A DNA stretch of 64,000 nucleotides from Selaginella moellendorffii. Its lineage: Eukaryota > Plantae > Lycopodiophyta. Position 1 is the first letter of the stretch, and each line of letters opens with the position of its first letter. Of this stretch, positions 1-56,937 are shown in pieces. Under the pieces are notes generated by a model. It was not told the DNA's origin. It searched no databases and worked only from the letters and a program-made list of their open reading frames with translations. The translations under genes and the position numbers were made by a program. The DNA lies in NCBI RefSeq assembly GCF_000143415.4, contig NW_003314325.1, positions 776,086 to 840,085 of the forward strand, in the 5' to 3' direction.

Positions 1-970
1 GTTCAAGTCCTGGCAGGTTCTAGCTTCCCGATGTTTTTCATGGCATCCCCGATCGCTCAGCTGCACTCCAAATGCCGGGCGCGCTCGTCAACGACAGAAT
101 TAACTTCCTGGACACAAGTGGAAGAGAGCAGGCTGGTTTTCCGGGCGATGGATCAAAAGGATATCATCTCCTAATGTCTTGCGCAGCTTACGTTTGGGTT
201 GAGCGTCTCAGCGGCAGTGCAAGATCTATCCTATCCGGTAAGCTCTTATTCCGTTTGCTCTCTTCTTGTTTCTTCGTTTCCAGTTGTGAGTTTTCGATTA
301 TGTTGACACGGTTGTGATGATCGGACAAACCAGCACTTTCCAAAAGGACAGCACTATCCATACTTATGGAAGCATCGTCTACGTGAAATGCACATCTACT
401 ATACGATCTACATCTCGGACGACTGTCCTAAGTCCATCTACGGGTACAAGAAAACTCATTTATATTTTGGAGAGAACTAAACGAGTGAAAAATAGGTGGC
501 CATAGAGACTGGAACCCTCCAAATACGCTGCGTTCTAGCTGATAGTCGTCAGCTGCTCTATACCGATGGCTTTCCAGTAAGAAACGTGTTTAACCGTGTT
601 ATATGCGCTTGCTTCAATGGAGCGTCCAACACCGCTCAAACAGGAGGCTTGGACATGCGAGTGATAGTAAGCAAGATAAGCAGGGTCTGACCTGACCACA
701 TCCAGCAGCTGATGATATCTCCAGAGGATCTCAAGGTCTGTCAATCTTTCTCCTCGAGTTTTAACAAGTTTGTCCTTTTACTGAGATCTTGGTTATCTCT
801 TAAGGTTTCTAAGCAATGCACGGCGTTATTGCTTTCTACAAAGACACAACGAGAGTCCTTGTTAACACTCTTGGATTTCAAAGTTATGGAGGCACACGCT
901 CCATACGTCTGGGTGGGATGTTTTCTCAGAAATCCTGGAGGTCTCGAGTTTTCTTGACTTTTAGTTTTAG

Positions 971-1850
971 GGAAGGTCAGGTATGGACGTCCATGAGCAA
1001 GATGAGATAGCAGTTTCGCAATGGTTTCAAGAAGCATGAGCCGCAGGTCTTCGAGATCATAACCTTTTTAAAGTTTGGCATTGGACAGCGTGCGTTTCTC
1101 ATCCAGACTCAAGGTATGTATGTTTGGAGCTATGGCCGTTGTGCATTATTTATGGTTTTTATGTTTTTGATGGAGGGAAACATACTGTGGGACTGCATCT
1201 CATTTCTAGACGATGCCACAGTGGCGATAATCAAGTCACTAGGTGGATTGAGAGCGATTGCCACCTCTCACCCGCATTACTACAGCACAAACTCTCGATG
1301 GAGCGAGGCTTTTGGAGGCGTCCCGGTTTATATCCACGGATGGTATTGTCTACCTTTGTTTCTCTCTTTCATTTCGATCTCTCTGTATCCATACTTTTGC
1401 AGAGTGGTTTACCAGCATGAAAAGGTTAAGTTCTACTATGGGAGGGACTCACGCTTTTAGCCATTTTTCTGTTGCACAAATCCTCCACTGGTCTCATGGA
1501 GCTCAAGGGAGAGGTGTTTTATTCACTGGAGATATCTTACAGGTATAAACTTCCGTCGTTTACAAACTTTGTTTTCGTTTTGTTTTCCTCACTCCATGTT
1601 TGATTTGTAGGTGGGGATGGACAACAAAACAGTGAGCATAATGAGATCGTATCCAAGCTATATACCACTCTCGTCCATGTTTGATTTGTAGGTGGGGATG
1701 GACAACAAAATAGTGAGCATAATGAGATCGTATCTAAACTATATACCACTCTTGTCAAGCCACACTAAAAGGATAGGCCAGGTGATCGAGCCATGGGATT
1801 TTGGGAGGCTCTACGTTGTGTTTCAGGACAGAGAGGATGACGCTGCTTAA
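971..1850 (+). pseudogene. Metallo-beta-lactamase-fold hydrolase fragment, unit 1
   Basis: Spliced pieces GQVWTS..FGIGQRAFLIQTQ|EGNILWDCISFLDDATVAIIKSLGGLRAIATSHPHYYST..VLFTGDILQ|..SIMRSYP. 5' part missing, TAG at 1008-1010, deletions relative to 55926-56803. Confidence 0.85.
1593..1754 (+). repeat. 81-bp tandem duplication of an MBL intron-end/exon-start (in every unit; 79 bp in units 2, 4, 5, 6)
   Basis: TCCATGTTTGATTTGTAGGTGGGGATGGACAAC at 1593 and 1674; single copy in the solo locus (~56556). Confidence 0.95.
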
Positions 1851-2048
1851 GCATCACAATTATCGATTGACTCTCAAGTAATGAATCAGACTGAAACTCG
1901 ATATGCTTTTCTGATTATGATTTGCCATAACATTGTTTCCAAAGTTAAATTGGACATTTGTTTCTGTGAGGGAGAAAATAACTTAGAGTGAGCAGTGTTA
2001 CAGCATACACAGTGGATACATGGAGTTTCTTTTTACAAGATCTTTTGT

Positions 2049-2693
2049 CTAACCTCTAAGCTTCTCCAATGCTTGTCTTACATCTTCAACTCTTGCAATT
2101 TCCTTAAGCAGATTGCTTATCTTCTTCAATTCATCATATTTATGCCCTTTCCTGTTTTTGAATGCCCGGATGACAATTCCATTGCTGGGCTGCAAGCAAA
2201 AGGACTCTGGCTTGTCGTCCACGATCACCGTGTGTCTGAGGTCCCGCCCTAACCTTGAAAGATCTTTCACAACCTTTCTCCCTCCCACTTCCTTGGGCGA
2301 GCATGAATCTCTGTAGAGGCGATGGGTGAAGAGATTCCCAGCTGGGTCGAGCCTATCCAATATCCTGTCCGCATAAGGCTTCACCGCTCGAGTAAAAACC
2401 ACGATCTCATATATCTGACTCATCTCATTTAGAAATGTATCCACACCCGGCCGCTTTGCGACAAGGTAGCGCTGCAATGGAAGAATCTTCCCACTGAAGA
2501 GCTTGAGGGACGCTGTGGACTTGTGGGCATGGATTAGTGTCTCGTCCATGTCTAACACAAGCGTGGGTTTTTCCTCCAAAGCTGGTGGTAGTAGTGGAGA
2601 ACTGTGTGTCACCTTTACCTTTTTGTTCTTTACTTTGGTCACCATGTCGAGCGTTGCAAAACTCCAATCGCCATATTCTCTCGCCCTCTTCAT
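2049..2693 (-). CDS. SCP/FCP1-like CTD small phosphatase (NIF domain, HAD fold), copy 1, 214 aa
   Basis: LVLDMDETL (DxDxT), KRPGVDTFL, YEIVVFT, YADRILDRLDP, RLYRDSC, KDLSRLGRDL, VIVDD, QPSNGI; single uninterrupted ORF. Confidence 0.92.
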   Translation of the reverse strand: MKRAREYGDWSFATLDMVTKVKNKKVKVTHSSPLLPPALEEKPTLVLDMDETLIHAHKSTASLKLFSGKILPLQRYLVAKRPGVDTFLNEMSQIYEIVVFTRAVKPYADRILDRLDPAGNLFTHRLYRDSCSPKEVGGRKVVKDLSRLGRDLRHTVIVDDKPESFCLQPSNGIVIRAFKNRKGHKYDELKKISNLLKEIARVEDVRQALEKLRG

Positions 2694-2823
2694 CGCTCTG
2701 ATAAAAAAGAAAGAAAGAACGCAAGCCCTAATTGTAAAGGATCTTTATAAATCAAATTAAATACACTTTACTAAATATACCATAATTCTGGCCGTCGAAA
2801 ATTTCATGGATTTTTTCTCTCAG

Positions 2824-2987
2824 GCTCGCTGGTTTTGGAGGTGGGAGCGTTGTCCCGCTTAAATGGCAATCCACAGTTTGAGAGGAGTATGCGCAGTACT
2901 AGTGAACTGAACTTACTGGGAACGAACCTTGACATAACTGAGGATTTGTTCGATTGCATATTCTGGAACGCAGAGAGAGTTCAGTAG
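2824..2987 (+). pseudogene. Orphan exon fragment of a GH47 alpha-1,2-mannosidase (MNS5/EDEM-like); present in all 8 units
   Basis: After the TTTTTTCTCTCAG acceptor it reads (G)SLVLEVGALSRLNGNPQFE..SELNLLGTNLDI, resembling the MNS5-type GSLILEMGALSRLTGDPRFE..LDLLGTTLDV motif as recalled. Confidence 0.65.
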
Positions 2988-3332
2988 CTTTGGTTCTGAC
3001 CTCCAGCATGGATGTAAAGCGGATTTGAGTCACTGAAGGCGGAAGTTTGCCGGCTGAGAAAGAATCCAACAGCTCCAAATTTCCTTCTCAAGATGTTTGT
3101 CTTTCGCTGATATCTATTCTGACTTGAGCATTGAGAACGTGTGTTTCATTGTAGATCATTCCAACCATGGTGGTGAAACCATGGTTATCAACGTTAAGGT
3201 GCTACTACTGCCACTGGAGTAAAAGTTTGTGCGAGCTTTTGTGTGAGTTCCTGCTCTTGGATGTTTATCTATGGGAGATTGCCCCCTTTGTTTGCTCAAT
3301 CTATTCTCTTTTCTCTTGGCTCTCCAGAAATT

Positions 3333-3587
3333 ATGGCTCCTACTCGAAAGCTTGTGCTTGCATCGCTCCTCTAATGCCTGGTCATCACTGCGGCTTTTGC
3401 CGCTGCAGTTTTGTTTAGTTCTTTCTCCAAAATCTCGATAGTTTCTGTGTCCACACCAGCGACGACCATGGCGATCCATCAGCAAACTACAGTGCTCAAT
3501 AGTATAACTCTCTGTGTGTTTTTCATGACGTTTTTTCTGTGGATCTTAGCCTTCCTTTACACGGCTAGGCCATGTTTTGTTCTTTGA
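3333..3587 (+). pseudogene. Copy of the signal-peptide+TM microprotein gene, premature TAA (units 1-5, 7)
   Basis: MAPTRKLVLASLL*CLVITAAFAA...LCVFFMTFFLWILAFLYTARPCFVL; homologous to 40430-40695. Confidence 0.75.
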
Positions 3588-3643
3588 AGTTAAGCTTGAC
3601 TCGAGAAAATAAAATGGTCAAGAAATGGATGATCTTGCTCGCC

Positions 3644-3901
3644 GGGTCTACTCTGCTGGATTTGTCACAGTCTTTGCTGGTTGTGAATTTCGAGTCGGAG
3701 GACACGTTCATTGACCCTGAAGGCAGCGCTCGCGGCAGTGGAAGCGTATACAATTTCTAGATTTTGAAAAGCGCTGTTTTCTGCTAGATTCCAAGTGGCT
3801 TGCAGGTTGGTGGTGGTATAAACTCGGGGAACGCGAAGTCCTATCTCGATACTGGAGCAAGTCATGTGTTGTCACCTCGGTAAGTGTTTTATATCAGTCT
3901 T
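3644..3901 (+). pseudogene. HISN3 exon 3-4 fragment with intron remnants, inverted relative to the parent gene; in units 1-7
   Basis: [49 protein letters not shown] and GTAAGTGTTTTATATCAGTCTT match the reverse complement of 41562-41925. Confidence 0.88.
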
Positions 3902-3906
3902 GGAAT

Positions 3907-4979
3907 TTAACTCTTAACATTGTGTGTGTGTGAGATTAAGTTTTGCTCTGGCATTCTCTCGAGAGCGAGGAGTGCAATGCGATCGTCTGGATGGCAATGG
4001 TGCCGGATTTCGCTCACAAGGGACTCCTCTTGGAAACTCGAGTTTGGTGCCCGGAAGAGGCTCATCGCTTCTTGGAGGTGGCCAATTCCAGAGATAGGCC
4101 GAGAGGAGCACTGTGCGCGCCATCTTGCTCTTGTAAGGCATTCGATCGTAAATAAACTTTGCATTTTCAAGATGGTTTCTAGAGGTGAGCATATGGATCA
4201 TTGTTGCCCAAGAGATGAGCCATCTTTAGGAAGGAATCTAGTGCCTCGTCCAAATGCCCATTCGAGGCATATGCGCCAAGCATGGAGTTCCAGGCCACCA
4301 CGTGCCTCTCAAACAAACATTTAGCCTCCTCCAAGCAGCCATGAGGTGCATAGCCGTCGATCATAGCCGTAAATGCCACCTCATTAAGATCCGGGGCATC
4401 TTCAAAGAGATTCTTTGCTTGCTCCATATGCCCGGCCTGGTGATCATGGTCGTCCATGTTACTAGGGCATTCTATCAAAGAGATCTTTAGCTTCATCCAG
4501 CCGCTGGTTCTGGCAGTGGCCTTGGATCATGGCCGTCCACGGCGCGTGAGAGATGCCCGTTATGGGCCATGGCCGTGCTAGAAACGGGGGTTTGCTCCGG
4601 CATGGAGTGGAATACCGCCTCCGCCTCGCCGAGATTGCCACTCGGCGAGTACATCTCGATCATCGCGTTCCAGGTGATGGAATTCTTTGCAGGGATGCGA
4701 TCGAAGAGCTGCTTGGCGCGCTGCACGTCCCCGGCCGCGGCTTCAGGTCGTGGTTGCGAATGTAGGCCTGGAGGGTGAGATTCCAAGAGAAGAGATTGGG
4801 ATCCGAGGTAGAATCGAAGACCGATCGCGCTTCCTCCAGGCAGCCGCAGCGGCCATACATCTGGACGAGGAGATTTCGCAGGAAGACGCTGTTGTTGTGG
4901 TCGCTGTGAAGGATCTGGGCGATGGATCCGGCGGCCATTGTCGCAAGATGTGACGAGGGCGGCAAGCTCTTATGCGCAT
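3907..4979 (-). pseudogene. PLS-class PPR pseudogene, unit 1
   Basis: FLRNLLVQMYGRCGCLEEARSVFD, AKQLFDRIPAKNSITWNAMI and VVAWNSMLGAYASNGHLDEALDSF lie in different frames. Confidence 0.9.
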
Positions 4980-5990
4980 CGCATCATGGCCGTTGGATGA
5001 TGGGGACGTCCGAGGTTCAAGTCCTGGCAGGTTCTAGCTTCCCGATGTTTTTCATGGCACGCTGCGAGAACTCATCCCCCATCGCTCAGCTGCACTCCAA
5101 ATGCCGGGCGCGCTCGTCAACGACAGAATTAACTTCCTGGACACAAGTGGAAGAGAGCAGGCTGGTTTTCCGGGCGATGGATCAAAAGGATATCATCTCC
5201 TAATGTCTTGCGCAGCTTACGTTTGGGTTGAGCGTCTCAGCGGCAGTGCAAGATCTATCCTATCCGGTAAGCTCTTATTCCGTTTGCTCTCTTCTTGTTT
5301 CTTCGTTTCCAGTTGTGAGTTTTCGATTATGTTGACACGGTTGTGATGATCGGACAAACCAGCACTTTCCAAAAGGACAGCACTATCCATACTTATGGAA
5401 GCATCGTCTACGTGAAATGCACATCTACTATACGATCTACATCTCGGACGACTGTCCTAAGTCCATCTACGGGTACAAGAAAACTCATTTATATTTTGGA
5501 GAGAACTAAACGAGTGAAAAATAGGTGGCCATAGAGACTGGAACCCTCCAAATACGCTGCGTTCTAGCTGATAGTCGTCAGCTGCTCTATACCGATGGCT
5601 TTCCAGTAAGAAACGTGTTTAACCGTGTTATATGCGCTTGCTTCAATGGAGCGTCCAACACCGCTCAAACAGGAGGCTTGGACATGCGAGTGATAGTAAG
5701 CAAGATAAGCAGGGTCTGACCTGACCACATCCAGCAGCTGATGATATCTCCAGAGGATCTCAAGGTCTGTCAATCTTTCTCCTCGAGTTTTAACAAGTTT
5801 GTCCTTTTACTGAAATCTTGGTTATCTCTTAAGGTTTCTACGGCGTTATTGCTTTCTACAAAGACACAACGAGAGTCCTTGTTAACACTCTTGGATTTCA
5901 AAGTTATGGAGGCACACGCTCCATACGTCTGGGTGGGATGTTTTCTCAGAAATCCTGGAGGTCTCGAGTTTTCTTGACTTTTAGTTTTAG

Positions 5991-6848
5991 GGAAGGTCAG
6001 GTATGGACGTCCATGAGCAAGATGAGATTGCAGTTTCGCAATGGTTTCAAGAAGCATGAGCCGCAGGTCTTCGAGATCATAACCTTTCCAAAGTTTGGCA
6101 TTGGACAGCGTGCGTTTCTCATCCAGACTCAAGGTATGTATATGGCCGTTGTGCATTTTTTATGGTTTTTATGTTTTTGATAGAGGGAAACATACTGTGG
6201 GACTGCATCTCATTTCTAGACGATGCCACAGTGGCGATAATCAAGTCACTAGGTGGATTGAGAGCGATTGCCACCTCTCACCCGCATTACTACAGCACAA
6301 ACTCTCGATGGAGCGAGGCTTTTGGAGGCGTCCCGGTTTATACCCGGGAATGGTATTGTCTACCTTTGTTTCTCTCTTTCATTTCGATCTCTCTGTATCC
6401 ATACTTTTGCAGAGTGGTTTACCAGCACGAAAAGGTGAAGTTCTACTATGGGAGGGACTCACGCTTTTAGCCTTGCACAAATCCTCCACTGGTCTCATGG
6501 AGCTCAAGGAGAGGTGTTTTATTCACTGGAGATATCTTACAGGTATAAACTTCTGTCGTTTACAAACTTTGTTTTCGTTTTGTTTTCCTCACTCCATGTT
6601 TGATTTGTAGGTGGGGATGGACAACAAAACAGTGAGCATAATGAGATCGTACCCAAAGTATATACCACTCGTCCATGTTTGATTTGTAGGTGGGGATGGA
6701 CAACAAAATAGTGAGGATAGTGAGATCGTATCTAAACTATGTACCACTCTTGTCAAGCCACACTAAAAGGATAGGCCAGGTGATCGAGCCATGGGATTTT
6801 GGGAGGCTCTACGTTGAGTTTCAGGACAGAGAGGATGACGCTGCTTAA
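5991..6848 (+). pseudogene. MBL-fold hydrolase fragment, unit 2
   Basis: Copy of 971-1850. Confidence 0.82.
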
Positions 6849-7046
6849 GCATCACAATTATTGATTGACTCTCAAGTAATGAATCAGACTGAAACTCGAG
6901 ATGCTTTTCTGATTATGATTTGCCATAACATTGTTTCCAAAGTTAAATTGGACATTTGTTTTTGTGAGGGAGAAAATAACTTAGAGTGAGCAGTGTTACA
7001 GCATACACAGTGGATACATGGAGTTTCTTTTTACAAGATCTTTTGT

Positions 7047-7691
7047 CTAACCTCTAAGCTTCTCCAATGCTTGTCTTACATTTTCAACTCTTGCAATTTC
7101 CTTAAGCAGATTGCTTATCTTCTTCAATTCATCATATTTATGCCCTTTCCTGTTTTTGAATGCCCGGATGACAATTCCATTGCTGGGCTGCAAGCAAAAG
7201 GACTCTGGCTTGTCGTCCACGATCACCGTGTGTCTGAGGTCCCGCCCTAACCTTGAAAGATCTTTCACAACTTTTCTCCCTCCCACTTCCTTGGGCGAGC
7301 ATGAATCTCTGTAGAGGCGATGGGTGAAGAGATTCCCAACTGGGTCGAGCCTATCCAATATCCTGTCCGCATAAGGCTTCACCGCTCGAGTAAAAACCAC
7401 GATCTCATATATCTGACTCATCTCATTTAGAAATGTATCCACACCCGGCCGCTTTGCGACAAGGTAGCGCTGCAATGGAAGAATCTTCCCACTGAAGAGC
7501 TTGAGGGACGCTGTGGCCTTGTGGGCATGGATTAGTGTCTCGTCCATGTCTAACACAAGCGTGGGTTTTTCCTCCAAAGCTGGCGGTAGTAGTGGAGAAT
7601 TGTGTGTCACCTTTACCTTTTTGTTCTTTACTTTGGTCACCATGTCGAGCGTTGCAAAACTCCAATCGCCATATTCTCTCGCCCTCTTCAT
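7047..7691 (-). CDS. SCP/FCP1-like NIF phosphatase, copy 2
   Basis: Intact 214-aa ORF, same motifs; S31N, A118V, D204N. Confidence 0.92.
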   Translation of the reverse strand: MKRAREYGDWSFATLDMVTKVKNKKVKVTHNSPLLPPALEEKPTLVLDMDETLIHAHKATASLKLFSGKILPLQRYLVAKRPGVDTFLNEMSQIYEIVVFTRAVKPYADRILDRLDPVGNLFTHRLYRDSCSPKEVGGRKVVKDLSRLGRDLRHTVIVDDKPESFCLQPSNGIVIRAFKNRKGHKYDELKKISNLLKEIARVENVRQALEKLRG

Positions 7692-8904
7692 CGCTCTGAT
7701 AAAAAAGAAAGAAAGAACGCAAGCCCTAATTGTAAAGGATCTTTATAAATCAAATTAAATACACTTACTAAATATACCATCGTAGAAAATTTCATGGATT
7801 TTTTCTCTCAGGCTCGCTGGTTTTGGAGGTGGGAGCGTTGTCCCGCTTAAATGGCAATCCACAGTTTGAGAGGAGTATGCGCAGTACTAGTGAACTGAAC
7901 TTACTGGGAACGAACCTTGACATAACTGAAGATTTGTTCGATTGCATATTCTGGAACGCAGAGAGAGTTCAGTAGCTTTGGTTCTGACCTCCAGCATGGA
8001 TGTAAAGCGGATTTGAGTCACTGAAGGCGGAAGTTTGCTGGCTGAGAAAGAATCCAACAGCTCCAAATTTCCTTTAGCTCCAATCTAAACTCGCCTCAAG
8101 ATGTTCGTCTTTCGCTGATATCTATTCTGACTTGAGCATTGAGAACGTGTGTTTCATTGTAGATCATTCCAACCATGGTGGTGAAACCATGGTTATCAAC
8201 ATTAAGGTGCTACTACTGCCACTGGAGTAAAAGTTTGTGCGAGCTTTTGTGTGAGTTCGTGCTCTTGGATGTTTATCTATGGGAGATTGCCCCCTTTGTT
8301 TGCTCAATCTATTCTCTTTTCTCTTGGCTCTCCAGAAATTATGGCTCCTACTCGAAAGCTTGTGCTTGCATCGCTCCTCTAATGCCTGGTCATCACTGCG
8401 GCTTTTGCTGCTGCAGTTTTGTTTAGTTCTTTCTCCAAAATCTCGATAGTTTCTGTGTCCACACCAGCGACGACCATGGCGATCCATCAGCAAACTACAG
8501 TGCTCAATAGTATAACTCTCTGTGTGTTTTTCATGACGTTTTTTCTGTGGATCTTAGTCTTCCTTTACACGGCTAGGCCATGTTTTGTTCTTTGAAGTTA
8601 AGCTTGACTCGAGAAAATAAAGTGGTCAAGAAATGGATGATCTTGCTCGCCGGGTCTACTCTGCTGGATTTGTCACAGTCTTCGCTGGTTGTGAATTTCG
8701 AGTCGGAGGACACGTTCATTGACCCTGAAGGCAGCGCTCGCGGCAGTGGAAGCGTATACAATTTCTAGATTTTGAAAAGCGCTGTTTTTCTGCTAGATTC
8801 CAAGTGGCTTGCAGGTTGGTGGTGGTATAAACTCGGGGAACGCGAAGTCCTATCTCGATACATGTGTTGTCACCTCGGTAAGTGTTTTATATCAGTCTTG
8901 GAAT

Positions 8905-12074: not shown

Positions 12075-12719
12075 CTAACCTCTAAGCTTCTCCAATGCTT
12101 GTCTTACGTCTTCAACTCTTGCAATTTCCTTAAGCAGATTGCTTATCTTCTTCAATTCATCATATTTATGCCCTTTCCTGTTTTTGAATGCCCGGATGAC
12201 AATTCCATTGCTGGGCTGCAAGCAAAAGGACTCTGGCTTGTCGTCCACGATCACCGTGTGTCTGAGGTCCCGCCCTAACCTTGAAAGATCTTTCACAACC
12301 TTTCTCCCTCCCACTTCCTTGGGCGAGCATGAATCTCTGTAGAGGCGATGGGTGAAGAGATTCCCAGCTGGGTCGAGCCTATCCAATATCCTGTCCGCAT
12401 AAGGCTTCACCGCTCGAGTAAAAACCACGATCTCGTATATTTGACTCATCTCATTTAGAAATGTATCCACACCCGGCCGCTTTGCGACAAGGTAGCGCTG
12501 CAATGGAAGAATCTTCCCACTGAAGAGCTTGAGGGACGCTGTGGCCTTGTGGGCATGGATTAGTGTCTCGTCCATGTCTAACACAAGCGTGGGTTTCTCC
12601 TCCAAAGTTGGCGGTAGTAGTGGAGAACTGTGTGTCACCTTTACCTTTTTGTTCTTTACTTTGGTCACCATGTCGAGCGTTGCAAAACTCCAATCGCCAT
12701 ATTCTCTCACCCTCTTCAT
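12075..12719 (-). CDS. SCP/FCP1-like NIF phosphatase, copy 3
   Basis: Intact 214-aa ORF; A4V, A38T. Confidence 0.92.
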   Translation of the reverse strand: MKRVREYGDWSFATLDMVTKVKNKKVKVTHSSPLLPPTLEEKPTLVLDMDETLIHAHKATASLKLFSGKILPLQRYLVAKRPGVDTFLNEMSQIYEIVVFTRAVKPYADRILDRLDPAGNLFTHRLYRDSCSPKEVGGRKVVKDLSRLGRDLRHTVIVDDKPESFCLQPSNGIVIRAFKNRKGHKYDELKKISNLLKEIARVEDVRQALEKLRG

Positions 12720-17127: not shown

Positions 17128-17772
17128 CTAACCTCTAAGCTTCTCCAATGCTTGTCTTACATCTTCAACTCTTGCAATTTCCTTAAGCAGATTGCTTATC
17201 TTCTTCAATTCATCATATTTATGCCCTTTCCTGTTTTTGAATGCCCGGATGACAATTCCATTGCTGGGCTGCAAGCAAAAGGACTCTGGCTTGTCGTCCA
17301 CGATAACCGTGTGTCTGAGGTCCCGCCCTAACCTTGAAAGATCTTTCACAACCTTTCTCCCTCCCACTTCCTTGGGCGAGCATGAATCTCTGTAGAGGCG
17401 ATGGGTGAAGAGATTCCCAGCTGGGTCGAGCCTATCCAATATCCTGTCCGCATAAGGCTTCACCGCTCGAGTAAAAACCACGATCTCGTATATTTGACTC
17501 ATCTCATTTAGAAATGTATCCACACCTGGTCGCTTTGCGACAAGGTAGCGCTGCAATGGAAGAGTCCTCCCACTGAAGAGCTTGAGGGACGCTGTGGCCT
17601 TGTGGGCATGAATTAGTGTCTCGTCCATGTCTAACACAAGCGTGGGTTTCTCCTCCAAAGCTGGCAGTAGTAGTGGAGAACTGTGTGTCACCTTTACCTT
17701 TTTGTTCTTTACTTTGGTCACCATGTCGAGCGTTGCAAAACTCCAATCGCCATATTCTCTCGCCCTCTTCAT
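17128..17772 (-). CDS. SCP/FCP1-like NIF phosphatase, copy 4
   Basis: Intact 214-aa ORF; P36L, K69R, I70T. Confidence 0.92.
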   Translation of the reverse strand: MKRAREYGDWSFATLDMVTKVKNKKVKVTHSSPLLLPALEEKPTLVLDMDETLIHAHKATASLKLFSGRTLPLQRYLVAKRPGVDTFLNEMSQIYEIVVFTRAVKPYADRILDRLDPAGNLFTHRLYRDSCSPKEVGGRKVVKDLSRLGRDLRHTVIVDDKPESFCLQPSNGIVIRAFKNRKGHKYDELKKISNLLKEIARVEDVRQALEKLRG

Positions 17773-22159: not shown

Positions 22160-22804
22160 CTAACCTCTAAGCTTCTCCAATGCTTGTCTTACATCTTCAA
22201 CTCTTGCAATTTCCTTAAGCAGATTGCTTATCTTCTTCAATTCATCATATTTATGCCCTTTCCTGTTTTTGAATGCCCGGATGACAATTCCATTGCTGGG
22301 CTGCAAGCAAAAGGACTCTGGCTTGTCGTCCACGATAACCGTGTGTCTGAGGTCCCGCCCTAACCTTGAAAGATCTTTCACAACCTTTCTCCCTCCCACT
22401 TCCTTGGGCGAGCATGAATCTCTGTAGAGGCGATGGGTGAAGAGATTCCCAGCTGGGTCGAGCCTATCCAATATCCTGTCCGCATAAGGCTTCACCGCTC
22501 GAGTAAAAACCACGATCTCGTATATTTGACTCATCTCATTTAGAAATGTATCCACACCTGGTCGCTTTGCGACAAGGTAGCGCTGCAATGGAAGAGTCCT
22601 CCCACTGAAGAGCTTGAGGGACGCTGTGGCCTTGTGGGCATGAATTAGTGTCTCGTCCATGTCTAACACAAGCGTGGGTTTCTCCTCCAAAGCTGGCAGT
22701 AGTAGTGGAGAACTGTGTGTCACCTTTACCTTTTTGTTCTTTACTTTGGTCACCATGTCGAGCGTTGCAAAACTCCAATCGCCATATTCTCTCGCCCTCT
22801 TCAT
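22160..22804 (-). CDS. SCP/FCP1-like NIF phosphatase, copy 5
   Basis: Intact 214-aa ORF; protein identical to copy 4. Confidence 0.92.
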   Translation of the reverse strand: MKRAREYGDWSFATLDMVTKVKNKKVKVTHSSPLLLPALEEKPTLVLDMDETLIHAHKATASLKLFSGRTLPLQRYLVAKRPGVDTFLNEMSQIYEIVVFTRAVKPYADRILDRLDPAGNLFTHRLYRDSCSPKEVGGRKVVKDLSRLGRDLRHTVIVDDKPESFCLQPSNGIVIRAFKNRKGHKYDELKKISNLLKEIARVEDVRQALEKLRG

Positions 22805-27188: not shown

Positions 27189-27834
27189 CTAACCTCTAAG
27201 CTTCTCCAATGCTTGTCTTACGTCTTCAACTCTTGCAATTTCCTTAAGCAGATTGCTTATCTTCTTCAATTCATCATATTTATGCCCTTTCCTGTTTTTG
27301 AATGCCCGGATGACAATTCCATTGCTGGGCTGCAAGCAAAAGGACTCTGGCTTGTCGTCCACGATCACCGTGTGTCTGAGGTCCCGCCCTAACCTTGAAA
27401 GATCTTTCACAACCTTTCTCCCTCCCACTTCCTTGGGCGAGCATGAATCTCTGTAGAGGCGATGGGTGAAGAGATTCCCAGCTAGGGTCGAGCCTATCCA
27501 ATATCCTGTCCGCATAAGGCTTCACCGCTCGAGTAAAAACCACGATCTCATATATCTGACTCATCTCATTTAGAAATGTATCCACACCCGGCCGCTTTGC
27601 GACAAGGTAGCGCTGCAATGGAAGAATCTTCCCACTGAAGAGTTTGAGGGACGCTGTGGCCTTGTGGGCATGGATTAGTGTCTCGTCCATGTCTAACACA
27701 AGCGTGGGTTTTTCCTCCAAAGCTGGCGGTAGTAGTGGAGAACTGTGTGTCACCTTTACCTTTTTGTTCTTTACTTTGGTCACCATGTCGAGCGTTGCAA
27801 AACTCCAATCGCCATATTCTCTCACCCTCTTCAT
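27189..27834 (-). pseudogene. SCP/FCP1-like NIF phosphatase, copy 6, frameshifted
   Basis: 1-bp insertion at ~27484 (GCTAGGGTCG vs GCTGGGTCG) splits the ORF; possibly a sequencing error. Confidence 0.8.
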
Positions 27835-28493: not shown

Positions 28494-28748
28494 ATGGCTC
28501 CTACTCGAAAGCTTGTGCTTGCATCGCTCCTCTCATGCCTGGTCATCACTGCGGCTTTTGCCGCTGCAGTTTTGTTTAGTTCTTTCTCCAAAATCTCGAT
28601 AGTTTCTGTGTCCACACCAGCGACGACCATGGCGATCCATCAGCAAACTACAGTGCTCAATAGTATAACTCTCTGTGTGTTTTTCATGACGTTTTTTCTG
28701 TGGATCTTAGCCTTCCTTTACACGGCTAGGCCATGTTTTGTTCTTTGA
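28494..28748 (+). CDS. Open 84-aa copy of the microprotein (intron read through), unit 6
   Basis: TCA replaces TAA; two hydrophobic segments; ends ARPCFVL. Confidence 0.4.
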   Translation: MAPTRKLVLASLLSCLVITAAFAAAVLFSSFSKISIVSVSTPATTMAIHQQTTVLNSITLCVFFMTFFLWILAFLYTARPCFVL

Positions 28749-30119: not shown

Positions 30120-31142
30120 CGCATCATGGCCGTTGGATGATGGGGACGTCCGAGGTTCAAGTCCTGGCAGGTTCTAGCTTCCCGATGTTTTTCATGGCAT
30201 CCCCGATCGCTCAGCTGCACTCCAAATGCCGGGCGCGCTCGTCAACGACAGAATTAACTTCCTGGACACAAGTGGAAGAGAGCAGGCTGGTTTTCCGGGC
30301 GATGGATCAAAAGGATATCATCTCCTAATGTCTTGCGCAGCTTACGTTTGGGTTGAGCGTCTCAGCGGCAGTGCAAGATCTATCCTATCCGGTAAGCTCT
30401 TATTCCGTTTGCTCTCTTCTTGTTTCTTCGTTTCCAGTTGTGAGTTTTCGATTATGTTGACACGGTTGTGATGATCGGACAAACCAGCACTTTCCAAAAG
30501 GACAGCACTATCCATACTTATGGAAGCATCGTCTACGTGAAATGCACATCTACTATACGATCTACATCTCGGACGACTGTCCTAAGTCCATCTACGGGTA
30601 CAAGAAAACTCATTTATATTTTGGAGAGAACTAAACGAGTGAAAAATAGGTGGCCATAGAGACTGGAACCCTCCAAATACGCTGCGTTCTAGCTGATAGT
30701 CGTCAGCTGCTCTATACCGATGGCTTTCCAGTAAGAAACGTGTTTAACCGTGTTATATGTGCTTGCTTCAATGGAGCGTCCAACACCGCTCAAACAGGAG
30801 GCTTGGACATGCGAGTGATAGTAAGCAAGATAAGCAGGGTCTGACCTGAGGTTCTGCTCCGCCTCCACCACATCCAGCAGCTGATGATATCTCCAGAGGA
30901 TCTCAAGGTCTGTCAATCTTTCTCCTCGAGTTTTAACAAGTTTGTCCTTTTACTGAGATCTTGGTTATCTCTTAAGGTTTCTAAGCAATGCACGGCGTTA
31001 TTGCTTTCTACAAAGACACCACGAGAGTCCTTGTTAACACTCTTGGATTTCAAAGTTATGGAGGCACACGCTCCATACGTCTGGGTGGGATGTTTTCTCA
31101 GAAATCCTGGAGGTCTCGACTTTTCTTGACTTTTAGTTTTAG

Positions 31143-32021
31143 GGAAGGTCAGGTATGGACGTCCATGAGCAAGATGAGATAGCAGTTTCGCAATGGTTTC
31201 AAGAAGCATGAGCCGCAGGTCTTCGAGATCATAACCTTTTTAAAGTTTGGCATTGGACAGCGTGCGTTTCTCATCCAGACTCAAGGTATGTATGTTTGGA
31301 GCTATGGCCGTTGTGCATTTTTTATGGTTTTTATGTTTTTGATGGAGGGAAACATACTGTGGGACTGCATCTCATTTCTAGACGATGCCACAGTGGCGAT
31401 AATCAAGTCACTAGGTGGATTGAGAGCGATTGCCATTTCTCACCCGTATTACTACAGCACAAACTCTCGATGGAGCGAGGCTTTTGGAGGCGTCCCGGTT
31501 TATACCCGCGAATGGTATTGTCTACCTTTGTTTCTCTCTTTCATTTCGATCTCTCTGTATCCATACTTTTGCAGAGTGGTTTACCAGCATGAAAAGGTTA
31601 AGTTCTACTATGGGAGGGACTCACGCTTTTAGCCATTTTTCTGTTGCACAAATCCTCCACTGGTCTCATGGAGCTCAAGGAGAGGTGTTTTATTCACTGG
31701 AGATATCTTACAGGTATAAACTTCTGTCGTTTACAAACTTTGTTTTCGTTTTGTTTTCCTCACTCCATGTTTGATTTGTAGGTGGGGATGGACAACAAAA
31801 CAGTGAGCATAATGAGATCGTATCCAAGCTATATACCACTCTCGTCCATGTTTGATTTGTAGGTGGGGATGGACAACAAAATAGTGAGCATAATGAGATC
31901 GTATCTAAACTATATACCACTCTTGTCAAGCCACACTAAAAGGATAGGCCAGGTGATCGAGCCATGGGATTTTGGGAGGCTCTACATTGCGTTTCAGGAC
32001 AGAGAGGATGACGCTGCTTAA
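31143..32021 (+). pseudogene. MBL-fold hydrolase fragment, unit 7
   Basis: Copy of 971-1850; SHPYYY variant. Confidence 0.82.
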
Positions 32022-32228
32022 GCATCACAATTATCGATTGACTCTCAAGTAATGAATCAGACTGAAACTCGAGATGTCTTTCTGATTATGATTTGCCATA
32101 ACATTGTTTCCAAAGCTAAATTGGACATTTGTTTTTGTGAGGGAGAAAATGCCACAATCAACTTAGAGTGAGCAGTGTTACAGCATACACAGTGGATACA
32201 TGGAGTTTCTTTTTACAAGATCTTTTGT

Positions 32229-32873
32229 CTAACCTCTAAGCTTCTCCAATGCTTGTCTTACATCTTCAACTCTTGCAATTTCCTTAAGCAGATTGCTTAT
32301 CTTCTTCAATTCATCATATTTATGCCCTTTCCTGTTTTTGAATGCCCGGATGACAATTCCATTGCTGGGCTGCAAGCAAAAGGACTCTGGCTTGTCGTCC
32401 ACGATAACCGTGTGTCTGAGGTCCCGCCCTAACCTTGAAAGATCTTTCACAACCTTTCTCCCTCCCACTTCCTTGGGCGAGCATGAATCTCTGTAGAGGC
32501 GATGGGTGAAGAGATTCCCAGCTGGGTCGAGCCTATCCAATATCCTGTCCGCACAAGGCTTCACCGCTCGAGTAAAAACCACGATCTCATATATCTGACT
32601 CATCTCATTTAGAAATGTATCCACACCCGGCCGCTTTGCGACAAGGTAGCGCTGCAATGGAAGAATCTTCCCACTGAAGAGTTTGAGGGACGCTGTGGCC
32701 TTGTGGGCATGGATTAGTGTCTCGTCCATGTCTAACACAAGCGTGGGTTTTTCCTCCAAAGCTGGCGGTAGTAGTGGAGAACTGTGTGTCACCTTTACCT
32801 TTTTGTTCTTTACTTTGGTCACCATGTCGAGCGTTGCAAAACTCCAATCGCCATATTCTCTCACCCTCTTCAT
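32229..32873 (-). CDS. SCP/FCP1-like NIF phosphatase, copy 7
   Basis: Intact 214-aa ORF; A4V, Y107C. Confidence 0.92.
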   Translation of the reverse strand: MKRVREYGDWSFATLDMVTKVKNKKVKVTHSSPLLPPALEEKPTLVLDMDETLIHAHKATASLKLFSGKILPLQRYLVAKRPGVDTFLNEMSQIYEIVVFTRAVKPCADRILDRLDPAGNLFTHRLYRDSCSPKEVGGRKVVKDLSRLGRDLRHTVIVDDKPESFCLQPSNGIVIRAFKNRKGHKYDELKKISNLLKEIARVEDVRQALEKLRG

Positions 32874-34086
32874 CGCTCTGATAAAAAAGAAAGAAAGAAC
32901 GCAAGCCCTAATTGTAAAGGATCTTTATAAATCAAATTAAATACACATTACTAAATATACCATAATTCTGGCCGTAGAAAATTTCATGGATTTTTTCTCT
33001 CAGGCTCGCTGGTTTTGGAGGTGGGAGCGTTGTCCCGCTTAAATGGCAATCCACAGTTTGAGAGGAGTATGCGCAGTACTAGTGAACTGAACTTACTGGG
33101 AATGAACCTTGACATAACTGAGGATTTGTTCGATTGCATATTCTGGAACGCAGAGAGAGTTCAGTAGCTTTGGTTCTGACCTCCAGCATGGATGTAAAGC
33201 GGATTTGAGTCACTGAAGGCGGAAGTTTGCCGGCTGAGAAAGAATCCAACAGCTCCAAATTTCCTTCTCAAGATGTTTGTCTTTCGCTGATATCTATTCT
33301 GACTTGAGCATTGAGAAGGTGTGTTTCATTGTAGATCATTCCAACCATGGTGGTGAAACCATGGTTATCAACGTTAAGGTGCTACTACTGCCACTGGAGT
33401 AAAAGTTTGTGCGAGCTTTTGTGTGAGTTCGTGCTCTTGGATGTTTATCTATGGGAGATTGCCCCCTTTGTTTGCTCAATCTATTCTCTTTTCTCTTGGC
33501 TCTCCAGAAATTATGGCTCCTACTCGAAAGCTTGTGCTTGCATCGCTCCTCTAATGCCTGGTCATCACTGCGGCTTTTGCTGCTGCAGTTTTGTTTAGTT
33601 CTTTCTCCAAAATCTCGATAGTTTCTGTGTCCACACCAGCGACGACCATGGCGATCCATCAGCAAACTACAGTGCTCAATAGTATAACTCTCTGTGTGTT
33701 TTTCATGACGTTTTTTCTGTGGATCTTAGCCTTCCTTTACACTGCTAGGCCATGTTTTGTTCTTTGAAGTTAAGCTTGACTCGAGAAAATAAAGTGGTCA
33801 AGAAATGGATGATCTTGCTCGCCGGGTCTACTCTGCTGGATTTGTCACAGTCTTCGCTGGTTGTGAATTTCGAGTCGGAGGACACGTTCATTGACCCTGA
33901 AGGCAGCGCTCGCGGCAGTGGAAGCGTATACAATTTCTAGATTTTGAAAAGCGCTGTTTTCTGCTAGATTCCAAGTGGCTTGCAGGTTGGTGGTGGTATA
34001 AACTCGGGGAACGCGAAGTCCTATCTCGATACTGGAGCAAGTCATGTGTTGTCACCTCGGTAAGTGTTTTATATCAGTCTTGGAAT

Positions 34087-35137
34087 TTAACTCTTAACAT
34101 TGTGTGTGTGTGAGATTAAGTTTTGCTCTGGCATTCTCTCGAGAGCGAGGAGTGCAATGCGATCGTCTGGATGGCAATGGTGCCGGATTTCGCTCACAAG
34201 GGACTCCTCTTGGAAACTCGAGTTTGGTGCCCGGAAGAGGCTCATCGCTTCTTGGAGGTGGCCAATTCCAGAGATAGGCCGAGAGGAGCACTGTGCGCGC
34301 CATCTTGCTCTTGTAAGGCATTCGATCGTAAATAAACTTTGCATTTTCAAGATGGTTTCTAGAGGTGAGCATATGGATCATTGTTGCCCAAGAGATGAGC
34401 CATCTTTAGGAAGGAATCTAGTGCCTCGTCCAAATGCCCATTCGAGGCATATGCGCCAAGCATGGAGTTCCAGGCCACCACGTGCCTCTCAAACAAACAT
34501 TTAGCCTCCTCCAAGCAGCCATGAGGTGCATAGCCGTCGATCATAGCCGTAAATGCCACCTCATTAAGATCCGGGGCATCTTCAAAGAGATTCTTTGCTT
34601 GCTCCATATGCCCGGCCTGGTGATCATGGTCGTCCATGTTACTAGGGCATTCTATCAAAGAGATCTTTAGCTTCATCCAGCCGCTGGTTCTGGCAGTGGC
34701 CTTGGATCATGGCCGTCCACGGCGCGTGAGAGATGCCCGTTATGGGTCATGGCCGTGCTAGAAACGGGGGTTTGCTCCGGCATGGAGTGGAATACCGCCT
34801 CGGCGAGTACATCTCGATCATCGCGTTCCAGGTGATGGAATTCTTTGCAGGGATGCGATCGAAGAGCTGCTTGGCGCGCTGCACGTCCCCGGCCGCGGCT
34901 TCAGGTCGTGGTTGCGAATGTAGGCCTGGAGGGTGAGATTCCAAGAGAAGAGATTGGGATCCGAGGTAGAATCGAAGACCGATCGCGCTTCCTCCAGGCA
35001 GCCGCAGCGGCCATACATCTGGACGAGGAGATTTCGCAGGAAGACGCTGTTGTTGTGGTCGCTGTGAAGGATCTGGGCGATGGATCCGGCGGCCATTGTC
35101 GCAAGATGTGACGAGGGCGGCAAGCTCTTATGCGCAT
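34087..35137 (-). pseudogene. PPR pseudogene, unit 7
   Basis: As unit 5. Confidence 0.88.
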
Positions 35138-36160
35138 CGCATCATGGCCGTTGGATGATGGGGACGTCCGAGGTTCAAGTCCTGGCAGGTTCTAGCTTCC
35201 CGATGTTTTTCATGGCATCCCCGATCGCTCAGCTGCACTCCAAATGCCGGGCGCGCTCGTCAACGACAGAATTAACTTCCTGGACACAAGTGGAAGAGAG
35301 CAGGCTGGTTTTCCGGGCGATGGATCAAAAGGATATCATCTCCTAATGTCTTGCGCAGCTTACGTTTGGGTTGAGCGTCTCAGCGGCAGTGCAAGATCTA
35401 TCCTATCCGGTAAGCTCTTATTCCGTTTGCTCTCTTCTTGTTTCTTCGTTTCCAGTTGTGAGTTTTCGATTATGTTGACACGGTTGTGATGATCGGACAA
35501 ACCAGCACTTTCCAAAAGGACAGCACTATCCATACTTATGGAAGCATCGTCTACGTGAAATGCACATCTACTATACGATCTACATCTCGGACGACTGTCC
35601 TAAGTCCATCTACCGGTACAAGAAAACTCATTTATATTTTGGAGAGAACTAAACGAGTGAAAAATAGGTGGCCATAGAGACTGGAACCCTCCAAATACGC
35701 TGCGTTCTAGCTGATAGTCGTCAGCTGCTCTATACCGATGGCTTTCCAGTAAGAAACGTGTTTAACCGTGTTATATGCGCTTGCTTCAATGGAGCGTCCA
35801 ACACCGCTCAAACAGGAGGCTTGGACATGCGAGTGATAGTAAGCAAGATAAGCAGGGTCTGACCTGAGGTTCTGCTCCGCCTCCACCACATCCAGCAGCT
35901 GATGATATCTCCAGAGGATCTCAAGGTCTGTCAATCTTTCTCCTCGAGTTTTAACAAGTTTGTCCTTTTACTGAGATCTTGGTTATCTCTTAAGGTTTCT
36001 AAGCAATGCACGGCGTTATTGCTTTCTACAAAGACACCACGAGAATCCTTGTTAACACTCTCGGATTTCAAAGTTATGGAGGCACACGCTCCATACGTCT
36101 GGGTGGTATGTTTTCTCAGAAATCCTGGAGGTCTCGAGTTTTCTTGACTTTTAGTTTTAG

Positions 36161-37030
36161 GGAAGGTCAGGTATGGACGTCCATGAGCAAGATGAGATAG
36201 CAGTTTCGCAATGGTTTCAAGAAGCATGAGCCGCAGGTCTTCGAGATCATAACCTTTTTAAAGTTTGGCATTGGACAGCGTGCGTTTCTCATCCAGACTC
36301 AAGGTATGTATGTTTGGAGCTATGGCCGTTGTGCATTTTTTATGGTTTTTATGTTTTTGATGGAGGGAAACATACTGTGGGACTGCATCTCATTTCTAGA
36401 CGATGCCACAGTGGCGATAATCAAGTCACTAGGTGGATTGAGAGCGATTGCCACCTCTCACCCGCATTACTACAGCACAAACTCTCGATGGAGCGAGGCT
36501 TTTGGAGGCGTCCCGGTTTATACCCGGGAATGGTATTGTCTACCTTTGTTTCTCTCTTTCATTTCGATCTCTCTGTATCCATACTTTTGCAGAGTGGTTT
36601 ACCAGCACGAAAAGGTGAAGTTCTACTATGGGAGGGACTCACGCTTTTAGCCTTGCACAAATCCTCCACTGGTCTCATGGAGCTCAAGGAGAGGTGTTTT
36701 ATTCACTGGAGATATCTTACAGGTATAAACTTCTGTCGTTTACAAACTTTGTTTTCGTTTTGTTTTCCTCACTCCATGTTTGATTTGTAGGTGGGGATGG
36801 ACAACAAAACAGTGAGCATAATGAGATCGTACCCAAAGTATATACCACTCTCGTCCATGTTTGATTTGTAGGTGGGGATGGACAACAAAATAGTGAGGAT
36901 AGTGAGATCGTATTTAAACTATGTACCACTCTTGTCAAGCCACACTAAAAGGATAGGCCAGGTGATCGAGCCATGGGATTTTGGGAGGCTCTACATTGCG
37001 TTTCAGGACAGAGAGGATGACGCTGCTTAA
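36161..37030 (+). pseudogene. MBL-fold hydrolase fragment, unit 8
   Basis: Copy of 971-1850. Confidence 0.82.
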
Positions 37031-37237
37031 GCATCACAATTATCGATTGACTCTCAAGTAATGAATCAGACTGAAACTCGAGATGTCTTTCTGATTATGA
37101 TTTGCCATAACATTGTTTCCAAAGCTAAATTGGACATTTGTTTTTGTGAGGGAGAAAATGCCACAATCAACTTAGAGTGAGCAGTGTTACAGCATACACA
37201 GTGGATACATGGAGTTTCTTTTTACAAGATCTTTTGT

Positions 37238-37882
37238 CTAACCTCTAAGCTTCTCCAATGCTTGTCTTACATCTTCAACTCTTGCAATTTCCTTAAGCAG
37301 ATTGCTTATCTTCTTCAATTCATCATATTTATGCCCTTTCCTGTTTTTGAATGCCCGGATGACAATTCCATTGCTGGGCTGCAAGCAAAAGGACTCTGGC
37401 TTGTCGTCCACGATCACCGTGTGTTTGAGGTCCCGCCCTAACCTTGAAAGATCTTTCACAACCTTTCTCCCTCCCACTTCCTTGGGCGAGCATGAATCTC
37501 TGTAGAGGCGATGGGTGAAGAGATTCCCAGCTGGGTCGAGCCTATCCAATATCCTGTCCGCATAAGGCTTCACCGCTCGAGTAAAAACCACGATCTCGTA
37601 TATTTGACTCATCTCATTTAGAAATGTATCCACACCTGGCCGCTTTGCGACAAGGTAGCGCTGCAATGGAAGAGTCTTCCCACTGAAGAGCTTGAGGGAT
37701 GCTGTGGCCTTGTGGGCATGAATTAGTGTCTCGTCCATGTCTAACACAAGCATGGGTTTCTCCTCCAAAGTTGGCGGTAGTAGTGGAGAACTGTGTGTCA
37801 CCTTTACCTTTTTGTTCTTTACTTTGGTCACCATGTCGAGCGTTGCAAAACTCCAATCGCCATATTCTCTCGCCCTCTTCAT
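37238..37882 (-). CDS. SCP/FCP1-like NIF phosphatase, copy 8
   Basis: Intact 214-aa ORF; A38T, T44M, I70T, R153K. Confidence 0.92.
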   Translation of the reverse strand: MKRAREYGDWSFATLDMVTKVKNKKVKVTHSSPLLPPTLEEKPMLVLDMDETLIHAHKATASLKLFSGKTLPLQRYLVAKRPGVDTFLNEMSQIYEIVVFTRAVKPYADRILDRLDPAGNLFTHRLYRDSCSPKEVGGRKVVKDLSRLGRDLKHTVIVDDKPESFCLQPSNGIVIRAFKNRKGHKYDELKKISNLLKEIARVEDVRQALEKLRG

Positions 37883-38541
37883 CGCTCTGATAAAAAAGAA
37901 AGAAAGAACGCAAGCCCTAATTGTAAAGGATCTTTATAAATCAAATTAAATACACTTTACTAAATATACCATAATTCTGGCCGTAGAAAATTTCATGGAT
38001 TTTTTCTCTCAGGCTCGCTGGTTTTGGAGGTGGGAGCGTTGTCCCGCTTAAATGGCAATCCACAGTTTGAGAGGAGTATGCGCAGTACTAGTGAACTGAA
38101 CTTACTGGGAACGAACCTTGACATAACTGAAGATTTGTTCGATTGCATATTCTGGAACGCAGAGAGAGTTCAGTAGCTTTGGTTCTGACCTCCAGCATGG
38201 ATGTAAAGCGGATTTGAGTCACTGAAGGCGGAAGTTTGCTGGCTGAGAAAGAATCCAACAGCTCCAAATTTCCTTTAGCTCCAATCTAAACTCGCCTCAA
38301 GATGTTCGTCTTTCGCTGATATCTATTCTGACTTGAGCATTGAGAAGGTGTGTTTCATTGTAGATCATTCCAACCATGGTGGTGAAACCATGGTTATCAA
38401 CGTTAAGGTGCTACTACTGCCACTGGAGTAAAAGTTTGTGCGAGCTTTTGTGTGAGTTCGTGCTCTTGGATCTTTATCTATGGGAGATTGCCCCCTTTGT
38501 TTGCTCAATCTATTCTCTTTTCTCTTGGCTCTCCAGAAATT

Positions 38542-38805
38542 ATGGCTCCTACTCGAAAGCTTGTGCTTGCATCGCTCCTCTCATGCCTGGTCATCACTGC
38601 GGCTTTTGCCGCTGCAGTTTTGTTTAGTTCTTTCTCCAAAATCTCGATAGTTTCTGTGTCCACACCAGCGACGACCATGGCGATCCATCAGCAAACTACA
38701 GTGCTCAATAGTATAACTCTCTGTGTGTTTTCCATGACGTTTTTTCTGTGGATCTTAGCCTTCCTTTACAGTACAGATCCTGCCCGAGTGTACTCAAAAC
38801 AGTAA
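38542..38805 (+). CDS. Open 87-aa copy of the microprotein, unit 8, fused across the array end
   Basis: TCA allele; the C-terminus STDPARVYSKQ comes from sequence beyond 38770. Confidence 0.35.
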   Translation: MAPTRKLVLASLLSCLVITAAFAAAVLFSSFSKISIVSVSTPATTMAIHQQTTVLNSITLCVFSMTFFLWILAFLYSTDPARVYSKQ

Positions 38806-56803: not shown

Positions 56804-56937
56804 ATATCACAATTATCAATTGGCTCTCAAGTAATTAATCAGACTGAAACTTGAGATGCTTTTCTGATTATGAATTGCCATGACATTGTTTCCAAAGTTC
56901 AGTGGATACATGAGTTTCTTTTTAAGAGATCTTTTGT

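What the first reader, a model, noticed from the sequence alone, without database searches (positions are those of the whole stretch)
1..38770. 5-kb tandem array whose only maintained cargo is an intronless CTD-type phosphatase
Seen: at least 8 units. The 645-bp NIF ORF is intact in 7 with no shared indel, while the other recognisable pieces are broken or truncated and carry more than 10 polymorphic indels. By eye the copies differ at about 12 amino-acid-changing and about 12 silent sites, fewer replacements than neutral change would give (~2.5-3:1). Established: SCP/FCP1 DxDxT enzymes dephosphorylate pSer/pThr substrates such as the RNA Pol II CTD and are usually multi-exon, low-copy genes. 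Inference: a dosage-amplified, lineage-specific phosphatase locus under purifying selection, possibly retro-derived. This is the best candidate for an undescribed system here.
Basis: partly seen in the sequence, partly recalled or inferred. Interest (0 to 1): 0.85.

Follow-up and report, generated by a model that had tools for sequence, protein, structure and literature searches.

The report
Spikemoss tandem array of divergent phosphatase
In the spikemoss Selaginella moellendorffii, a 5-kb patchwork of neighbouring gene scraps has been copied head-to-tail about ten times, and only one gene in it, a small phosphatase of a known family with an unusually altered surface, shows signs of being kept by selection; whether the extra copies matter is not shown.

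Summary
The array is real: 8 units of about 5.0 kb in the window, two more NIF copies to its left (10 in all), and an array on the allelic scaffold. The genome is Selaginella moellendorffii, and the ORFs are already annotated as probable CTD small phosphatases. The NIF ORF is under purifying selection (12 copies: 21 N/28 S, omega 0.31), whereas the other reading frames in the same units vary as if neutral (46/19; Fisher p=0.004). Dosage selection is not shown: private new changes look neutral (8 N/3 S) and include a frameshift. A recent retro-origin is unlikely: Selaginella paralogues and the closest angiosperm homologues are also intronless in the CDS. CTD specificity is doubtful: first-shell catalytic residues are intact, but Scp1 Phe106 is absent, a near-invariant Asp is Tyr, and the core is basic. 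The scan holds a same-window note on the patchwork, and my look-ups found no earlier report of this array on other DNA. Verdict: an ordinary tandem amplification carrying a lineage-specific variant of a known enzyme family.

The parts
1..38770 (.). Head-to-tail array, units U1-U8 (about 5.0 kb each); continues about 9.5 kb to the left of the window with two more NIF copies
2049..2693 (-). NIF/SCP-fold phosphatase ORF, unit 1 (214 aa)
7047..7691 (-). NIF ORF, unit 2
12075..12719 (-). NIF ORF, unit 3 (the copy that was folded)
17128..17772 (-). NIF ORF, unit 4
22160..22804 (-). NIF ORF, unit 5 (CDS identical to unit 4)
27189..27834 (-). NIF ORF, unit 6, frameshifted by a 1-nt insertion near 27484
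32229..32873 (-). NIF ORF, unit 7 (Y107C at a 99/102 conserved Tyr)
37238..37882 (-). NIF ORF, unit 8
2694..2770 (-). About 75-nt AT-rich element directly upstream of the NIF ATG (TGTATT, TATAAA, TAGGGCT, pyrimidine tract); homology to dispersed paralogues begins here; putative core promoter/leader, or the end of a 5' intron; present in every unit
972..1835 (+). Broken multi-exon metallo-beta-lactamase-fold gene (unit 1): no N-terminal CxxC exon match, frameshifted exon, duplicated 79-81-bp piece at 1593-1756, 3' end missing
3333..3587 (+). 84-codon hydrophobic small ORF (unit 1; in-frame stop in U1-5 and U7, open in U6 at 28494-28748 and in U8 at 38542-38805 with another end); inverted copy of 40436-40795
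3644..3901 (+). Fragments of the neighbouring HISN3/HisA-like gene (donor at 41563-41924, minus strand), unit 1
3960..5014 (-). PPR gene fragments, unit 1
55929..59136 (.). Older, degenerate MBL-NIF-PPR copy (about 82% identical); NIF remnant at about 56930-57577 (-) with stops and a 5-nt deletion; the allelic copy on the other scaffold is intact

Best explanation
A short cassette (about 75-nt leader plus a 645-bp intronless ORF) of an old Selaginella-specific SCP-fold subfamily lay next to an MBL-fold gene and PPR sequence. DNA-level segmental duplications copied this block locally and to another scaffold (shown by shared flanks). One copy was joined to inverted pieces of the neighbouring HISN3 region, plausibly by template switching (inferred), giving a 5-kb unit. 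Unequal crossing-over expanded it to about 10 copies, and exchange between units keeps them about 1% apart (recombination shown; mechanism inferred). Only the NIF frame shows purifying selection (shown); the rest is neutral passenger DNA. The protein most likely works as a Mg-dependent DxDxT phosphatase through a phospho-Asp48 intermediate (inferred from intact first-shell residues and fold, about 70%). Its remodelled, basic substrate surface points to an acidic or multiply phosphorylated target rather than Scp1-style CTD pSer5 recognition (inferred, weak). Copy number is most likely drifting, with selection keeping some working copies rather than all ten.
For: Array and mosaic; at least 17 recombination events among 7 units. 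Both scaffolds carry it. Selection: 21 N/28 S, omega 0.31, p=4e-5; lineage omega 0.21-0.28 for array stem and two paralogues; in-unit control 46 N/19 S, Fisher p=0.004. Catalytic set D48, D50, T52, R81, T101, K143, D159, D160 conserved; model pLDDT 91, best match Scp1, E=3e-18. Private derived changes 8 N/3 S, omega about 1.1, plus a frameshift and Y107C.
Against: No expression, read-depth or activity data. Private versus shared contrast is not significant (p=0.14), and young variants look neutral under any slow selection. N-site variation equals the non-ORF background; the signal is an excess of silent changes. Placement beside the AT5G45700-like clade (98/88) has a long stem, and an alternative grouping is not rejected (p-AU 0.25).
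Confidence: 0.6

Rival explanations
1. The amplification is selected for dosage: most copies are expressed and more enzyme is advantageous.
For: 9 of 10 copies on this scaffold keep the frame; arrays on both scaffolds; 70-nt upstream element nearly invariant in 12 copies; no strong C>T decay on the array lineage (7 of 17 changes).
Against: Neutral-looking private changes and lesions at conserved sites; low omega is also expected from inherited variants and conversion; the region is full of unselected duplications.
Confidence: 0.17
2. The array is now silent or redundant and starting to decay; the low omega is inherited from functional ancestors before amplification, and dispersed paralogues do the job.
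For: 8 N/3 S among private derived changes; 12 of 16 minor alleles that match an outgroup base are silent; neighbouring older copies decayed with 87% and 74% C>T/G>A changes.
Against: The array stem itself has omega 0.28; across 12 copies singletons are also silent-rich (11 N/15 S); RefSeq lists several transcript variants for MBL-derived models in the array, which hints at transcription of the region (inference).
Confidence: 0.12
3. The protein is a conserved pseudo-phosphatase or a basic binding module (Tim50-like loss of activity).
For: Near-invariant Asp of the DxEL motif (100/102) is Tyr; Ala after the motif II Thr (97/102) is Arg; core net charge +4 to +10 against a median of -6.
Against: All first-shell residues are retained across paralogues at about 60% identity. 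In Fcp1 the residue after the motif II Thr is Met244 and the described contact is through its main-chain amide (PMC4436666), so a large side chain there is compatible with activity.
Confidence: 0.07
4. The array is an assembly artefact.
For: A third unit on the other scaffold groups with this scaffold's units and lies among gaps, so some haplotype mixing is possible.
Against: Every unit differs from every other by 0.7-1.7% with shared, recombined variants; no N in the window; two units on the allelic scaffold form their own clade.
Confidence: 0.02
5. The NIF ORF is a recent retrocopy or cargo of a transposon.
For: Intronless CDS; short cassette; the genome has a NIF-bearing TIR transposon family according to unchecked scan notes.
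Against: No poly(A) remnant after the stop; the dispersed copy brought MBL-side flanking DNA; intronless CDS in a paralogue with 53% of four-fold sites changed and in angiosperm homologues; no transposase-like Pfam match in the unit ORFs scanned; no long fusion protein among the top hits.
Confidence: 0.02

Closest known systems
FCP/SCP (Pfam NIF, PF03031) aspartate phosphatases; human Scp1/Scp2 (PDB 1t9z, 2q5e)
   Same: Fold (TM 0.70 by query, 0.83 by target), DxDxT and the other first-shell residues, single small catalytic domain.
   Different: About 34% identity; Phe106, the reported pSer5 determinant (PMC4163886), is Lys; shorter insertion sheet lacking the xDF motif; acidic D-D-x-x-D loop replaced by a basic loop; Thr-Arg at motif II.
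Plant AT5G45700-like NIF proteins (FTAG motif; Hibiscus, Theobroma, rice)
   Same: Best non-Selaginella hits (43-49% identity), intronless CDS in the two tested, grouped together at 98/88; signs of local gene clusters in other plants.
   Different: The Selaginella proteins are shorter (214-225 aa against about 280-340), lie on a long stem, and carry the Asp-to-Tyr and basic-loop changes. The function of AT5G45700 is unstudied in the searchable literature (one table mention).
Arabidopsis SSP4/SSP4B/SSP5 (the SSPs with shown CTD phosphatase activity, PMC8774115)
   Same: Same family of single-domain SCP-like enzymes.
   Different: Not the nearest hits. The CTDSPL2-type (FTASQ) group, to which I recall SSP4/5 belong, is separate in the best tree, though joining it is not rejected.
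Tandemly arrayed genes in segmental duplications under concerted or birth-and-death evolution
   Same: Head-to-tail near-identical units, mosaic variants, pseudogenised older copies nearby.
   Different: The unit is 13% gene and 87% scraps of adjacent genes, unusual in degree only; the scan notes similar patchworks elsewhere in this genome (unchecked).

Membership tests
FCP/SCP (NIF) phosphatase family | Pfam NIF domain above curated cut-off | tested here: met
   168 bits against cut-off 21.8, full model covered
FCP/SCP (NIF) phosphatase family | DxDxT motif with motif II Thr, Lys and DD/DN | tested here: met
   D48-M-D50-E-T52, T101, K143, D159-D160
FCP/SCP (NIF) phosphatase family | SCP fold | tested here: met
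   pLDDT 91; Foldseek Scp1 E=3e-18
FCP/SCP (NIF) phosphatase family | Mg-dependent phosphatase activity | not testable with these tools
   needs an assay
Scp1-type CTD pSer5 phosphatases | Phe106 equivalent in the Pro3 pocket | tested here: not met
   position 58 is Lys (Glu or Arg in paralogues) (role from PMC4163886)
Scp1-type CTD pSer5 phosphatases | Dephosphorylates the CTD | not testable with these tools
   needs an assay
FCP1/CPL3-4 | BRCT domain and helical insert | tested here: not met
   214-aa single domain; no BRCT hit
AT5G45700-like plant clade | Groups with the clade in a tree | tested here: inconclusive
   98/88 support but long stem; alternative p-AU 0.25
AT5G45700-like plant clade | Intronless CDS | tested here: met
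   gene span equals 3x(length+1) in Hibiscus, rice and Selaginella
Recent retrocopy | Poly(A) remnant, homology limited to the mRNA, intron-bearing close parent | tested here: not met
   no close intron-bearing parent among hits
Dosage-selected gene amplification | Most copies expressed and loss-of-function copies purged | tested here: inconclusive
   9 of 10 frames open, private changes neutral-like; expression untested

The most novel reading that the evidence does not exclude
A lycophyte-specific branch of SCP-fold phosphatases has rebuilt its substrate surface (basic loop, Thr-Arg at motif II, loss of the DxEL Asp and of the Pro pocket Phe) for a new acidic, chromatin- or nucleic-acid-associated target, travels as a self-contained cassette of under 1 kb, and is being amplified for dosage in S. 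moellendorffii.
Probability: 0.12. Interest if true: 0.55.

Novelty: new variant of a known kind. Interest (0 to 1): 0.3.

Why it matters
It points to an unstudied, selection-maintained subfamily of plant SCP-like phosphatases whose active-site surroundings depart from near-invariant family positions, giving natural variants for testing what sets substrate choice in this family. The array also offers a clean internal control (one constrained ORF among neutral gene scraps in the same unit) for studying how tandem amplifications are kept or lost. It does not amount to a new kind of system.

Tried and rejected
The expression-atlas supplement held (10.1101/744326, stored cut short) has none of six gene numbers searched; uninformative. 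I first took the 3644-3901 pieces for BRAP2; translation showed HISN3/HisA motifs (Pfam only E=0.013, the rest from my own knowledge). My idea that singletons are neutral and shared variants constrained did not hold over 12 copies (11/15 against 10/13) and is only a trend on one scaffold (p=0.14). Loci for P0003, P0126, P0145, P0131 and P0004 were not on record, so the other haplotype's array was only partly seen. No Rfam match in a unit. The 84-aa small ORF has no Pfam or Atlas hit. I could not map Fcp1 Asp323 (a second-shell Mg-water ligand, PMC4436666) onto the lost Asp. No paper on this Selaginella family was found. Spliced models were not joined for any search: the MBL piece was searched as an unspliced ORF by reference, and the joined step was left out.
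Full report
Identity of the window. The NIF ORF's best hits are Selaginella moellendorffii proteins on a 1,143,871-bp contig. A fetched locus is identical to the first 2660 bases and places window position 1 at GL377629.1:776,086. The ORFs are already modelled by JGI and RefSeq as FCP1-homology or probable CTD small phosphatases.

The array. Self-comparison gives a period of about 5.0 kb from 1 to 38770. Eight units differ by 0.7-1.7% at SNPs, with 143 variable columns and 25 indel events. Two more NIF copies lie left of the window, so this scaffold has 10. The allelic scaffold GL377635.1 has at least three at the same place, with the same left neighbours; spacing between shared landmarks suggests about one unit fewer there if its gaps are sized correctly. 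Two of its units form their own clade, while a third, partial one among gaps groups with this scaffold's units, so per-haplotype copy number is uncertain. Of 2701 pairs of informative sites, 1273 fail the four-gamete test (minimum 17 recombination events).

Anatomy of a unit (U1 numbering). 972-1835 (+): a broken copy of a multi-exon MBL-fold gene. Its parent, with an N-terminal CxxC region, lies on the allelic scaffold just beyond the window's right end. All array copies examined share a frameshifted exon, and those aligned lack a match to the N-terminal exon and the last codons and carry a duplicated 79-81-bp piece. 2049-2693 (-): the NIF ORF. 2694-2770: an AT-rich leader. 3220-3584: an inverted copy of 40436-40795, holding an 84-codon hydrophobic ORF. 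3644-3901: pieces of the HISN3-like gene at 41.6-41.9 kb. 3960-5014: PPR fragments. Older MBL-NIF-PPR blocks lie at 55.9-59.1 kb and, inverted, beyond 64 kb. A dispersed copy on GL377604.1 carries the ORF with MBL-side flanking pieces, which shows DNA-level duplication.

Selection. In the window the count is 12 N and 12 S; with the array's own mutation spectrum omega is 0.41 (p=0.025). With 12 copies it is 21 N and 28 S, omega 0.31, p=4e-5. For the 10 copies of this scaffold with a CpG-aware expectation it is 0.44, p=0.02. The best control is internal: MBL, PPR and small-ORF frames in the same units give 46 N and 19 S, the neutral ratio, and differ from NIF at p=0.004. Over longer times the array stem and two paralogues have omega 0.21-0.28. 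Caveats: N-site variation is at the non-ORF background and silent variation is above it, so the segment has deeper ancestry than the unit average. Private derived changes on this scaffold are 8 N and 3 S (omega about 1.1; contrast p=0.14) and include Y107C, P106L and D144N; U6 also has a frameshift. The gene lineage is therefore constrained, but selection for ten copies is not shown. The degenerate neighbours changed mostly by C>T/G>A (58 of 67; 40 of 54) in CG, CHG and CHH contexts, as methylated DNA would (inference); the array lineage did not (7 of 17). The 56.9-kb copy is dead on this scaffold and intact on the allelic one.

The protein. The model is confident (pLDDT 91) and matches Scp1/Scp2 best. 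D48, D50, T52, R81, T101, K143, D159 and D160 are conserved; the corresponding Fcp1 residues bind Mg and phosphate or tether the active-site loop (PMC4436666). Departures are as follows. Arg102 stands where 97 of 102 homologues have Ala; this is probably tolerated, since Fcp1 has Met there and the described contact is the backbone amide. Tyr186 stands where 100 of 102 have Asp, in all six Selaginella proteins, inside a basic loop that replaces an acidic one. Lys58 stands at Scp1 Phe106, the reported pSer5 determinant (PMC4163886). The insertion sheet is shorter, and the core net charge is +4 to +10 against a median of -6. I infer an active phosphatase with altered specificity; 'CTD-type' holds for the fold only.

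Family position and introns. The Selaginella proteins form a 100/100 clade with three older branches and group with seed-plant AT5G45700-like proteins at 98/88, on a long stem (54 rows chosen from 271 domains, the rest left out for run time). Joining them to the CTDSPL2 group instead is not rejected (p-AU 0.25). Hibiscus and rice homologues and a 61%-identical Selaginella paralogue are intronless in the CDS, so intron absence is old and needs no recent retroposition. Arabidopsis has 16 SSP genes, only three with shown CTD activity (PMC8774115). Close-numbered paralogues on single contigs in Cryptomeria and Rubroshorea suggest that local expansions recur.

Leader. Homology among the dispersed copies starts about 75-100 nt above the ATG. 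TGTATT and TAGGGCT persist in the distant paralogue, whose four-fold sites are 53% changed, although whole-leader similarity beats shuffles only weakly (16, 68 and 417 of 1000). The last 70 nt are identical in all ten copies here and differ at one base on the other scaffold. A compact promoter is my reading. RefSeq models instead splice into this tract, and I cannot decide between them without reads.

Verdict. This is an ordinary tandem amplification in a duplication-prone region, carrying one constrained gene from a divergent, unstudied Selaginella branch of a known phosphatase family. Interest 0.3. Spliced models were not joined for searches.

Noticed in passing
L001:1374-2450: Parent MBL-fold gene with an N-terminal CxxC...CxxC region; most top hits are bacterial or metagenomic, plus Marchantia, Riccia and Psilotum, and no named seed-plant protein among the 120 listed. 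Possible ancient bacterial origin in seed-free plants.
   Followed up: partly
window:55929-59136 against L001:9000-12000: Allelic segments are only 80-88% identical here while flanks are 97-98%; this scaffold's copy decayed by C>T/G>A changes and the other allele's NIF ORF is intact.
   Followed up: yes
window:58634-59800 and 62922-63968: Long inverted-repeat arms around a GPN-type GTPase gene; a possible source of hairpin RNA and methylation (speculation).
   Followed up: no
window:38797-40014: Degenerate direct duplicate of the HISN3-like region at 40570-41797, with short inverted pieces, abutting the array's right end.
   Followed up: partly
window:40436-40795: Small hydrophobic ORF region with a signal-peptide-like start, donor of the unit's 84-codon ORF; no Pfam hit for it, and no Pfam or Atlas hit for the 84-aa copy.
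   Followed up: partly
L002:12182-14490: The array's left end on this scaffold is a scramble of five short, partly inverted unit pieces followed by a 1.3-kb AT-rich insert missing from the other scaffold.
   Followed up: no
window:42677-54944: Ordinary genes: calmodulin, Asp/Glu racemase-like, F-box/Kelch, MIKC MADS-box, TPT transporter, 5-FTHF cyclo-ligase, COX19-like (some names from my own knowledge).
   Followed up: no
window:62499-62927: Gly/Ser/Lys-repeat protein with a signal-peptide-like start and a Cys-containing tail.
   Followed up: no
proteins P0262, P0263, P0265: Proteins with two to four NIF domains in tandem; P0262 and P0265 belong to close-numbered genes on one Cryptomeria chromosome.
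   Followed up: partly
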